This document shows, in pieces, positions 13,745 through 14,520 of a stretch of DNA of 64,000 nucleotides (its first letter is position 1; each line of letters opens with the position of its first letter). Source of the stretch: Pecten maximus (Eukaryota); the NCBI RefSeq assembly GCF_902652985.1, contig NC_047024.1, positions 15,748,001 through 15,812,000 on the forward strand, written 5' to 3'. The notes under the pieces were generated by a model. The model searched no databases. It saw only the letters and a list, made by a program, of their open reading frames with translations, and was not told the DNA's origin. The position numbers and the translations under genes were made by a program.

Positions 13745-14520
13745 TGATATCCCTAATATCACTGACAAGCCCTAGAAGGACGAAACAGCTGTATGATGTC
13801 CCTAACATCAATGACGAGTCCAAGGACGAAACAGATGTATGGTGTTTCTAACATCACTGATGAGTCCTAGAAGGACCAGATGTATGGTGTCCCCAACATC
13901 ACTGACGAGTCCTAGAAGGACGAAACAGCTGTATGATGTCCCTAACATCACTGACGTGTCCTAGGACGAAACAGCTGTATGATGCCCCGAACATCACTGA
14001 CGCGTCTTAGAAGGACGAAACAGCTGTATGGTGTCTCTAACATCACTGCCGAGTCCTAGAAGGACGAAACAGCTGTATGATGTCTCTAACATCACTGACG
14101 AGTCCTAGAAGGACGAAACAGCTGTATGATGCCCCGAACATCACTGACGAGTCTTAGAAGGACGAAACAGCTGTATGATGCCCCGAACATCACTGACGAG
14201 TCTTAGAAGGACGAAACAGCTGTATGATGTCCCTAGTATCACTGACGAGTCCTAGAAGGACGAAACAGCTGTATGATGTCCCTAGTATCACTGACGAGTC
14301 CTAGAAGGACGAAACAGCTGTATGATGTCCCTAGTATCACTGACGAGTCCTAGAAGGACGAAACAGCTGTATGATGTCCCTAGTATCACTGACGAGTCCT
14401 AGAAGGACGAAACAGCTGTATGATGTCCCTAGTATCACTGACAAGTCATAGAAGGACGAAACAAATGAAAGGTGTCTCTAATATCACTGAAAAGTCATAG
14501 AAAGAGGAAACAGTTGTATT
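13745..14520 (+). ncRNA. Tandem array of 16 x 49-bp hammerhead ribozyme units
   Basis: Consensus CATCA-CTGACGA-GTCC-TAGAA-GGAC-GAAA-CAGCTG-TA-TGATG-TCCCTAA has the canonical CUGANGA and GAAA core, stem II GUCC/GGAC, stem I CAUCA/UGAUG and a GUA cleavage triplet. Intact cores start at 13902, 14095, 14144, 14193, 14242, 14291, 14340 and 14389. Confidence 0.92.

What the first reader, a model, noticed from the sequence alone, without database searches (positions are those of the whole stretch)
13745..14520. A 49-bp satellite made entirely of hammerhead ribozymes
Seen: 16 head-to-tail units, consensus CATCA CTGACGA GTCC TAGAA GGAC GAAA CAGCTG TA|TGATG TCCCTAA. All conserved hammerhead core nucleotides (C3-U4-G5-A6-N7-G8-A9, G12-A13-A14-A15.1, U16.1, H17=A) are present in 8 units, 7 of them consecutive (14095-14430); edge units are decayed. 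Known: tandem hammerheads occur in Penelope-like elements and in non-LTR retrozymes or satellites (newt satellite 2, schistosome Sm-alpha), whose units are usually a few hundred nt with cargo between ribozymes. Here only a ~7-nt linker is not ribozyme. Inference: a read-through transcript would cut itself into 49-nt monomers, which if ligated would be ribozyme-only circles. That would be a minimal retrozyme-like replicon, and rolling-circle reverse transcription of such a circle would directly generate this kind of array.
Basis: partly seen in the sequence, partly recalled or inferred. Interest (0 to 1): 0.93.

Follow-up and report, generated by a model that had tools for sequence, protein, structure and literature searches.

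The report
Hammerhead ribozyme minisatellite in scallop
This is a real run of 16 head-to-tail 49-base copies of a self-cutting hammerhead RNA motif, but it is the multiplied ribozyme part of a short mobile element found all over this scallop-like genome, not a free-standing mini-replicon.

Summary
Window 13745-14518 (+) is 16.0 units of 49 bp. Each unit is a complete hammerhead ribozyme; 8 units keep the whole catalytic core, 7 of them consecutive (14078-14420). One unit passes Rfam's Hammerhead_1 threshold.

The replicon reading is not supported.
- Arrays of this family lie between a conserved 5' arm of about 190 bp and a 3' arm of 50-110 bp.
- The 3' junction is always in the same phase. This array keeps the 3' arm.
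- A copy with a single hammerhead between the same arms exists.
- The unit junction is the start of the 3' arm fused to the end of the 5' arm, as one 49-bp DNA duplication would give.
- Blocks of identical neighbours, higher-order periodicities, more decayed edges and a flat conservation profile point to ordinary DNA-level array turnover and neutral decay.
- The four youngest units are predicted to misfold.

RNA-seq contigs hold family units but none of this locus's unique flanks, and DNA carry-over cannot be excluded.

A 2026 preprint already lists retrozyme consensus lengths down to 51 bp. Identical hammerheads occur elsewhere in about 565-bp tandem units.

This scan has already found and followed up the same family on other DNA of this genome.

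Verdict: a compact variant of a known kind, and probably inert here.

The parts
13745..14518 (+). Array 1: 16 tandem 49-bp units, each a complete hammerhead ribozyme (helix I 6 bp with a 5-nt loop, CUGACGA, helix II 4 bp with a 5-nt loop, GAAA, palindromic helix III half-site, U16.1, A17). The predicted cut is GUA|UGAUG.
   Evidence: TRF, unit parse, Rfam
13896..13939 (+). The one unit that passes Rfam's Hammerhead_1 gathering score (35.8 against 34 bits)
14078..14420 (+). Seven consecutive units with an intact catalytic core. For 14078, 14127 and 14176 the hammerhead is the predicted MFE fold in tandem context. The four identical units 14225-14420 carry a GUAUCA helix-I variant and are predicted to misfold.
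14499..14626 (+). 3' arm of the host element. It starts with the helix-I 3' strand of the last ribozyme and is shared with other arrays of the family.
   Evidence: nhmmer E 2.4e-17, junction listing, alignments
13228..13748 (+). First ~520 bp of an unrelated dispersed repeat of at least 1.2-1.8 kb (at least 243 candidate copies). It is cut off at GTGTTG|ATGAT, where the array starts, with 4-5 bp of microhomology. It takes the place of the family's 5' arm.
23755..24246 (-). Array 2: 10 decayed units of the same family (0-1 intact cores)
24225..24436 (-). 5' arm of the host element of array 2
   Evidence: nhmmer E 4.9e-34, alignment
23652..23774 (-). 3' arm of the host element of array 2
   Evidence: nhmmer E 1.2e-10

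Best explanation
The array is the tandemly multiplied ribozyme module of a short, non-coding, hammerhead-bearing mobile element. That element has a 5' arm of about 190 bp, one canonical type I hammerhead, and a 3' arm of 50-110 bp. It resembles a SINE or a non-LTR retrozyme.

One 49-bp DNA duplication spanning both strands of helix I fused the start of the 3' arm (TGATGT) to the end of the 5' arm (CCCTAACATCA). This turned the old 5' flank into loop 1 and made a unit that is all ribozyme. Array-bearing copies then spread through the genome. Each array has since grown, shrunk and decayed by ordinary replication slippage or unequal exchange.

The copy in this window has lost its 5' arm. It abuts a truncated unrelated repeat at a microhomology junction and keeps its 3' arm.

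If transcribed (inferred, not shown), neighbouring units would pair their ACAGCUGU palindromes into helix III and cut after GUA, releasing 49-nt RNAs with 5'-OH and 2',3'-cyclic phosphate ends. At this locus only three or four units are predicted to fold well, and the locus is probably an inert relic.
For: - Conserved arms around many arrays: alignments, nhmmer hits E 1e-10 to 5e-44, arm consensus. Loose ends of contigs from two species independently show the same arm motifs just before and after arrays.
- Constant 3' junction, GTA followed by TGRTGCAGTTT..., in window arrays 1 and 2 and in L009, L013, L017, L020, L027 and L036.
- L036 is a copy with a single hammerhead and the same 3' arm.
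- All 18 arrays share the same 49-bp junction.
- DNA-level turnover: runs of 2 and 4 identical neighbours in this array; periodicities at lag 3-4 in L002, L011, L016 and L020; edge units 0.881 against interior 0.935 identity to consensus, p 1e-7.
- Neutral decay: core 0.92, loops 0.93-0.94, stems 0.91 conserved. 190 of 468 units keep the core and 89 are fully intact. The worst-kept positions are CpG sites.
- Covariation is barely above shuffles: 93.1% against 92.9% of cells paired.
- 26% of the window is minisatellite, in 17 arrays of 200 bp or more with units of 20-80 bp, so tandem duplication of short units is routine here.
- Hammerhead identity. Tandem fold.
Against:
- About half of the sampled arrays show no recognisable arm on one or both sides. 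These could be truncated copies or arrays that moved on their own.
- Units are more alike between loci (about 85-94%) than arms (about 70-75%). A single origin plus neutral decay does not explain this by itself. It needs array homogenisation or selection on the ribozyme in master copies.
- The edge-decay measure is biased by how my parser ends arrays.
- The missing 5' arm here may be a 5'-truncated retro-insertion or a later deletion; I could not tell which.
Confidence: 0.7

Rival explanations
1. The array-bearing elements are (or recently were) active non-LTR retrozymes. Arrays are transcribed, and the multimeric hammerheads cut efficiently as dimers. The released RNAs (49-nt units, and arm-containing pieces between arrays of tandem elements) are circularised by a tRNA ligase and copied by a Penelope-like reverse transcriptase. 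The multiplied ribozyme would then be a functional processing module rather than junk.
For: - The ribozyme is the canonical metazoan retrozyme type, with a palindromic loop 3 (PMC4209133, PMC7229834).
- The same core, helix II and helix III occur in tandem units of about 565 bp in unrelated contigs.
- Units are better conserved between loci than arms.
- There is a small excess of double compensatory changes, 14 cells against 7.2, reached by 4 of 500 shuffles.
- Contigs of two RNA-seq runs hold units and arm-array junctions.
- Two 5' arms lie 1372 bp apart in the same orientation on C4.
- One locus has an inverted partial 5' arm upstream, as in Penelope-like insertions.
Against: - The conservation profile is flat and only 19% of units are fully intact.
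- No RT or GIY-YIG ORF lies within 1.5 kb of the 18 sampled arrays.
- RNA-run contigs cannot exclude DNA carry-over and show no ends or strand.
- This locus's unique flanks have no depth in the RNA runs.
Confidence: 0.13
2. One reading: a 49-nt ribozyme-only circular RNA is a minimal replicon, and rolling-circle reverse transcription of it creates arrays directly.
For: - The unit contains nothing but ribozyme.
- Array 1 is 16.0 units long and starts and ends near the cleavage phase.
- Some arrays lack recognisable arms.
- The retrozyme model proposes cDNA multimers made from circles (PMC7761336).
Against: - The apparent end phase is explained by the 3' arm that follows.
- The start sits on a TGAT microhomology with the neighbouring repeat.
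- 5' starts of other arm-less arrays fall in many phases.
- The first 49-nt unit cannot be cut out of a single-hammerhead transcript, so the founding duplication was at the DNA or template-switch level.
- Identical-neighbour blocks, higher-order repeats and older edges are not expected if all units are born together.
- The youngest units misfold.
Confidence: 0.05
3. The arrays are the central tandem repeats of a Helentron-derived non-autonomous DNA transposon (HINE, CvA or pearl type), as with many bivalve satellite-like repeats. The hammerhead would be incidental cargo.
For: The architecture is the same: a 5' part of about 150 bp, a variable tandem core with a truncated first unit, and a 3' part of about 60 bp. 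This is known from oysters and scallops (PMC5874043, PMC7492417). The window is packed with other minisatellites.
Against: - Inverted matches between the 5' and 3' arms do not exceed shuffles in three complete copies: 4 against 3.7, 0 against 1.8, 5 against 3.3.
- No microsatellite was seen between the 5' arm and the array.
- Element termini and insertion sites could not be defined.
Confidence: 0.07

Closest known systems
Metazoan non-LTR retrozymes and hammerhead satellites (newt satellite 2, Schistosoma Sm-alpha, Dolichopoda pDo500, coral, mussel and axolotl retrozymes; Cervera & de la Pena 2020, PMC7229834)
   Same: - A canonical type I hammerhead with 6-bp helix I, 4-bp helix II (GUCC/GGAC) and a 1-2-bp helix III capped by a palindromic loop that lets tandem copies act as dimers.
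- Head-to-tail repeats with one ribozyme each.
- Non-coding and dispersed in thousands of copies.
- Identical core, helix II and helix III are found in tandem units of about 565 bp in other organisms.
   Different: - Described units carry 150 to more than 1000 nt of non-ribozyme sequence that forms a rod-like circle. Here the unit is 49 nt with no cargo.
- The array is nested inside a larger element with arms.
- A 2026 preprint lists vertebrate retrozyme consensus lengths from 51 bp upward, so the size gap is small.
- Expression as circles is not shown here.
[quoted passage not shown]
   Same: A type I hammerhead that needs a partner copy to form helix III. It is associated with retroelement-like repeats, 5'-truncated copies and partial tandems.
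   Different: - PLE hammerheads lack helix III nucleotides and loop-loop contacts; this one is the canonical form.
- No RT/GIY-YIG ORF was found next to the 18 sampled arrays.
- The link to a PLE could not be tested genome-wide.
Tandem-repeat-carrying non-autonomous elements of bivalves (CvA, pearl, DTC84, Cg_HINE; PMC7492417, PMC5874043)
   Same: A short 5' part, a variable-length tandem core and a short 3' part. Many short dispersed arrays rather than a few long ones. Array length set by DNA-level processes.
   Different: Their repeats are about 150-170 bp without ribozymes. Subterminal inverted repeats and a microsatellite define them, and neither was found here.
Double-hammerhead processing of avocado sunblotch viroid and newt transcripts (Forster et al. 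1988, as cited in PMC4209133)
   Same: A weak helix III in the monomer. Two adjacent copies share an extended helix III, so multimers cut while monomers are spared.
   Different: Those RNAs are 247-330 nt replicons or transcripts with other sequence between the ribozymes. Here successive ribozymes share every nucleotide.

Membership tests
Hammerhead ribozyme, type I (Rfam RF00163) | Conserved core CUGANGA ... GAAA, with U16.1 and H17 not G | tested here: met
   8 of 16 units in this array; 190 of 468 units in 18 arrays
Hammerhead ribozyme, type I (Rfam RF00163) | Score at or above the curated gathering threshold of the covariance model | tested here: met
   35.8 against 34 bits for 13896-13939. 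The other units score 17.7-32 bits, below threshold.
Hammerhead ribozyme, type I (Rfam RF00163) | Helices I, II and III supported by covariation | tested here: inconclusive
   The family is too homogeneous: 93.1% of cells paired against 92.9% in shuffles; 14 double-change cells against 7.2
Hammerhead ribozyme, type I (Rfam RF00163) | Mg2+-dependent self-cleavage at H17 | not testable with these tools
   Needs in vitro transcription. Only folding was predicted.
Metazoan non-LTR retrozyme | Head-to-tail genomic repeats, each with one canonical type I hammerhead | tested here: met
Metazoan non-LTR retrozyme | Repeat unit of roughly 150 to more than 1000 nt with non-ribozyme sequence that folds into a stable circle | tested here: not met
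   The unit is 49 nt and all of it is ribozyme. As a 49-nt circle the hammerhead fold evaluates at +3.5 kcal/mol, against -3.6 for the circular MFE. A preprint lists consensus lengths down to 51 bp, so the size criterion is soft.
Metazoan non-LTR retrozyme | Accumulation as linear and circular monomer RNAs | tested here: inconclusive
   Units are present in contigs of two RNA-seq runs, but contigs show no ends or strand and DNA carry-over is not excluded
Penelope-like element pseudo-LTR hammerhead | Lies in direct repeats that flank an RT plus GIY-YIG ORF | tested here: not met
   No such ORF within 1.5 kb of the 18 sampled arrays or in the window. The sample is small and not genome-wide.
Helentron non-autonomous element (HINE, CvA or pearl type) | 5' and 3' subterminal inverted repeats, a 3' palindrome, and a microsatellite before the tandem core | tested here: not met
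   Inverted matches between arms do not exceed shuffles in 3 copies. No microsatellite appears in the arm consensus. True termini were not defined, so the test is weak.
Helentron non-autonomous element (HINE, CvA or pearl type) | Insertion at TT without target-site duplication | not tested

The most novel reading that the evidence does not exclude
Transcripts of the better-preserved arrays cut themselves into 49-nt hammerhead-only RNAs that are ligated into circles. These would be the smallest natural ribozyme circles known, and they (or 98-196-nt multimers) would occasionally be reverse-transcribed to seed new arm-less arrays. The family would then be a cargo-less end point of retrozyme evolution.
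Probability: 0.08. Interest if true: 0.8.

Novelty: new variant of a known kind. Interest (0 to 1): 0.35.

Why it matters
The family shows how far a ribozyme-bearing repeat can be stripped down. Here a minisatellite's whole unit is one hammerhead, and in tandem the units convert a weak type I motif into a closed type III-like fold. That gives a natural, compact test case for dimer-dependent hammerhead cleavage, and for the lower size limit of retrozyme-type circular RNAs. The evidence here says the arrays grew as ordinary DNA minisatellites inside a mobile element. Nothing here calls for a new replication mode.

Tried and rejected
- Flank comparison by plain BLAST found almost nothing because the arms are only about 70% alike. 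Alignments and nhmmer were needed.
- I first took the repeated 5' flank of array 1 for the family's arm. It is an unrelated repeat of at least 1.2 kb, whose other 20 sampled copies carry no array at that point.
- The downstream 600 bp is unique in the genome.
Element termini, target-site duplications, tandem host elements and Penelope linkage could therefore not be pursued.
- The exact scallop unit was not found in metagenome contigs.
- A 20-nt piece of the unit was not found in any paper, and no paper pairs 'hammerhead ribozyme' with 'scallop' in a relevant way.
- Long 'ORFs' near arrays are open frames of other satellites with no meaningful Pfam match.
- Laying reads gave only contigs, so no transcript ends, strand or level. 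One constrained-ensemble figure above 1 comes from forcing a C-A pair and was ignored.

Full report
OBSERVATION

Tandem Repeats Finder reports one array at 13744-14519 with period 49, 16.0 copies and 89% matches. I cut the array into units that start right after the predicted cleavage site. This gives 16 units at 13745-14518.

Eight units keep every conserved hammerhead nucleotide (CUGANGA, GAAA with A15.1, U16.1, H17=A). They are 13885-13933 and the seven consecutive units 14078-14420. The first three and the last two units are decayed.

Rfam's Hammerhead_1 model scores 35.8 bits at 13896-13939, against a gathering score of 34 (E 2.7e-5 for the whole window). Ten further units score 17.7-32 bits.

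Anatomy of the unit (a consensus-like copy is window:14078-14126:+):
- a 6-bp helix I closed by a 5-nt loop;
- the CUGACGA core strand;
- a 4-bp helix II (GUCC/GGAC) with a 5-nt loop;
- GAAA;
- the palindrome CAGCUG, then U16.1 and A17.

Read across a unit boundary, the repeat also matches the type III model at 37.3 bits, below its threshold of 48.5.

A second, inverted array lies at 23755-24246 (-). It has 10 units and is almost entirely dead.

THE FAMILY IN THE GENOME

The window is C10:15748001-15812000 of a 918,306,378-bp assembly in 3983 contigs with at least 19 large sequences. Earlier notes of this scan call it the king scallop. The assembly size and contig number fit that from my memory, but I did not test it.

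- A seven-unit query finds at least 1165 candidate places on most chromosomes, with arrays longer than 3 kb.
- An exact 35-nt core-to-cleavage-site pattern occurs 371 times, against 0 for the reversed control. Six of the 371 are in this array.
- 8.5% of the 471 units I sampled carry that exact pattern. The family therefore holds at least several thousand units.
- One locus on C6 (21.853-21.866 Mb) has many perfect units.
- A second species also holds the family at very high depth (run X6).

WHAT SURROUNDS THE ARRAYS

Plain BLAST of flanks found little. Alignments and profile searches then showed two arms:
- a 5' arm of about 190 bp in L008, L009, L018, L019, L027, L029 and window array 2;
- a 3' arm of 50-110 bp in L009, L013, L017, L027, L028, L036 and both window arrays.

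Contigs from two species show the same arm motifs immediately before and after arrays (table 7).

The 3' junction is always the same. The last GTA is followed by TGRTGCAGTTT..., so the 3' strand of helix I of the last ribozyme is the first part of the arm. Array 1 of the window has this arm at 14499-14626 (E 2.4e-17).

L036 is a copy with a single hammerhead and the same 3' arm.

In the arm consensus, the 5' arm ends ...AGGCCCTTAGCATCA just before the CUGA core, and the 3' arm begins TGATGCAG. The junction inside every tandem unit, TGATGT|CCCTAACATCA, is these two ends fused. One tandem duplication of a 49-bp segment covering both strands of helix I explains the unit, its length and loop 1. 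All 18 arrays sampled share this junction. The duplication therefore happened once (or very few times), and array-bearing copies then spread.

A single-hammerhead transcript has only one cut site. The founding 49-nt unit therefore cannot have been cut out as RNA.

THE 5' SIDE OF ARRAY 1

Positions 13228-13748 are the first ~520 bp of an unrelated dispersed repeat of at least 1.2-1.8 kb, with at least 243 candidate copies. In other copies this repeat runs on past the point where the array begins here, and none of the 20 sampled copies carries an array at that point.

The junction shares 4-5 bases (ATGAT). The rest of that repeat is nowhere else in the window, and the 600 bp downstream of the array are unique in the genome.

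This copy has thus lost its 5' arm, either by 5' truncation at insertion or by a later deletion. I could not decide which.

HOW THE ARRAYS GREW

- In this array, two identical units (14127, 14176) and four identical units (14225-14420) lie side by side. Variants are shared by neighbours.
- Across 18 arrays, several show higher similarity at lag 3 or 4 than at lag 1 (L002, L011, L016, L020).
- Within-array identity (0.893) exceeds between-array identity (0.850).
- The two units at each edge are more decayed than interior units (0.881 against 0.935 identity to consensus, p 1e-7). The way my parser ends arrays inflates this last figure.

These are the usual marks of slippage or unequal exchange. 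They are not expected if all units of an array were copied at once from one 49-nt circle.

26% of the window is minisatellite, in 17 arrays of 200 bp or more with units of 20-80 bp. Tandem duplication of short units is therefore commonplace in this genome.

IS THE RIBOZYME UNDER SELECTION?

- Among 468 units, conservation is flat: core 0.92, loops 0.93-0.94, stems 0.91. The weakest positions are the two CpG sites.
- 190 units keep the core and 89 keep core, stems and palindrome.
- On 148 distinct units, 93.1% of cells pair against 92.9% in shuffles. Double changes are slightly enriched, 14 against 7.2, reached by 4 of 500 shuffles. The tool's own notes say relatedness alone can produce this.

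The genomic copies look like neutrally decaying products of a recent amplification.

One thing this does not explain: units are more alike between loci (about 85-94%) than arms (about 70-75%). That points to homogenisation within arrays or to selection on the ribozyme in the master copies.

FOLDING

- Alone, a 49-nt monomer does not favour the hammerhead: -3.0 against an MFE of -8.8 kcal/mol. As a circle the figures are +3.5 against -3.6.
- In the tandem reading, where helix III forms from the palindromes of two successive units, the hammerhead is the MFE fold for units 14078, 14127 and 14176. For 14078 it takes 0.60 of the ensemble.
- For 13885 the share is 0.16, because the upstream palindrome is mutated.
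- The four identical youngest units have two G-U pairs in helix I and an alternative pairing of GUCCCUAG with CUAG..GGAC. They are predicted to misfold, with the hammerhead at 3e-4 of the ensemble.

These energies ignore tertiary contacts and co-transcriptional folding.

RNA

Contigs of two RNA-seq runs of the same organism (X18, X19; one study) hold family units and arm-array junctions, in records of up to 922 nt. Nothing lies on the unique flanks of this locus. Contigs give no ends, strand or level, and for a repeat of thousands of copies a small DNA carry-over would give the same picture. Transcription of the family is possible but not shown. Transcription of this locus is not seen.

COMPARISON WITH WHAT IS KNOWN

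- The ribozyme is the 'canonical' metazoan type I hammerhead: helix I of 6 bp, helix II of 4 bp, and a helix III of 1-2 bp capped by a small palindromic loop. This form works as a dimer in tandem repeats (PMC4209133).
- Non-LTR retrozymes are tandem repeats with one such ribozyme per unit, expressed as circles of 150 to more than 1000 nt (PMC7229834). They are thought to depend on Penelope-like elements (PMC7761336, bioRxiv 10.64898/2026.07.22.740005).
- That preprint lists vertebrate retrozyme consensus lengths from 51 to 972 bp. Ribozyme-sized units are therefore already on record, though not described in detail.
- In metagenome contigs, the same core, helix II and ACAGCUGU helix III occur in 25 contigs. 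These include classic tandem units of 565-569 bp (L064, L068). None has 49-bp spacing.
- Naiad, the dominant Penelope-like clade of bivalves, lacks canonical hammerheads (PMC8557442).
- I found no RT or GIY-YIG ORF near the 18 sampled arrays.
- The architecture of 5' part, tandem core and 3' part also recalls the Helentron-derived elements of oysters and scallops. Their subterminal inverted repeats and microsatellite were not found.

EARLIER NOTES OF THIS SCAN

The same family was found and followed up several times on other DNA of this genome. The common reading was an expanded ribozyme module of a mobile element of about 390 bp, grown by DNA duplication. My own loci give the same picture independently. 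My arms add up to roughly 350 bp with one ribozyme.

VERDICT

The hammerhead satellite is real and is an unusually compact variant of the known hammerhead-bearing repeats. The minimal-replicon interpretation is not supported, and this locus is most likely an inert, partly decayed copy. Self-cleavage and the fate of any 49-nt RNA remain to be tested at the bench.

Noticed in passing
window 1-64000: 26% of the window (16.8 kb) is tandem repeat. There are 17 arrays of 200 bp or more with unit lengths of 20, 25, 29, 37, 40-43, 41, 44, 49, 52, 55, 59, 62, 69 and 80 bp, and some adjacent arrays are inverted copies of each other (1-1550 against 2616-3361; 3356-4366 against 4358-6150).
   Followed up: partly
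window 13228-13748; L031-L050: A dispersed repeat of at least 1.2-1.8 kb, with at least 243 candidate copies at 67-92% identity. Its copy here is cut off exactly where the hammerhead array starts. No class was assigned.
   Followed up: partly
window 53261-53676 and L017:840-908: The 59-bp satellite of the window also lies directly upstream of a hammerhead array on another chromosome (C6, 32.03 Mb). The 41-bp satellite at 48113-48359 recurs in L043. Different minisatellites therefore tend to sit next to each other.
   Followed up: no
G000:C6:21852746-21866425: A locus spanning about 13.7 kb with dozens of perfect hammerhead units, probably the best-preserved array or arrays of the family. The sequence could not be fetched.
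   Followed up: no
L018:74-260 (-) and L018:1253-1459 (+): An inverted partial copy of the 5' arm lies about 1 kb upstream of a forward arm plus array. This arrangement is described for Penelope-like insertions. It is a single case.
   Followed up: no
window 14225-14420: In the four identical units, the loop-1 region GUCCCUAG can pair with CUAG..GGAC of helix II and loop 2. This gives a competing fold 5 kcal/mol more stable than the hammerhead. In consensus units, the 3-nt complementarity of loop 1 (CUA) and loop 2 (UAG) could instead be a loop-loop contact.
   Followed up: partly
L064, L068 (metagenome contigs): Classic tandem repeats of 565-569 bp from an unknown organism, each with a hammerhead that has the same core, helix II and helix III palindrome as the scallop unit.
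   Followed up: partly
window 33718-34974 (-): A 418-aa open frame with a C-terminal SOCS box (Pfam E 3e-5), probably an exon of a host gene.
   Followed up: no
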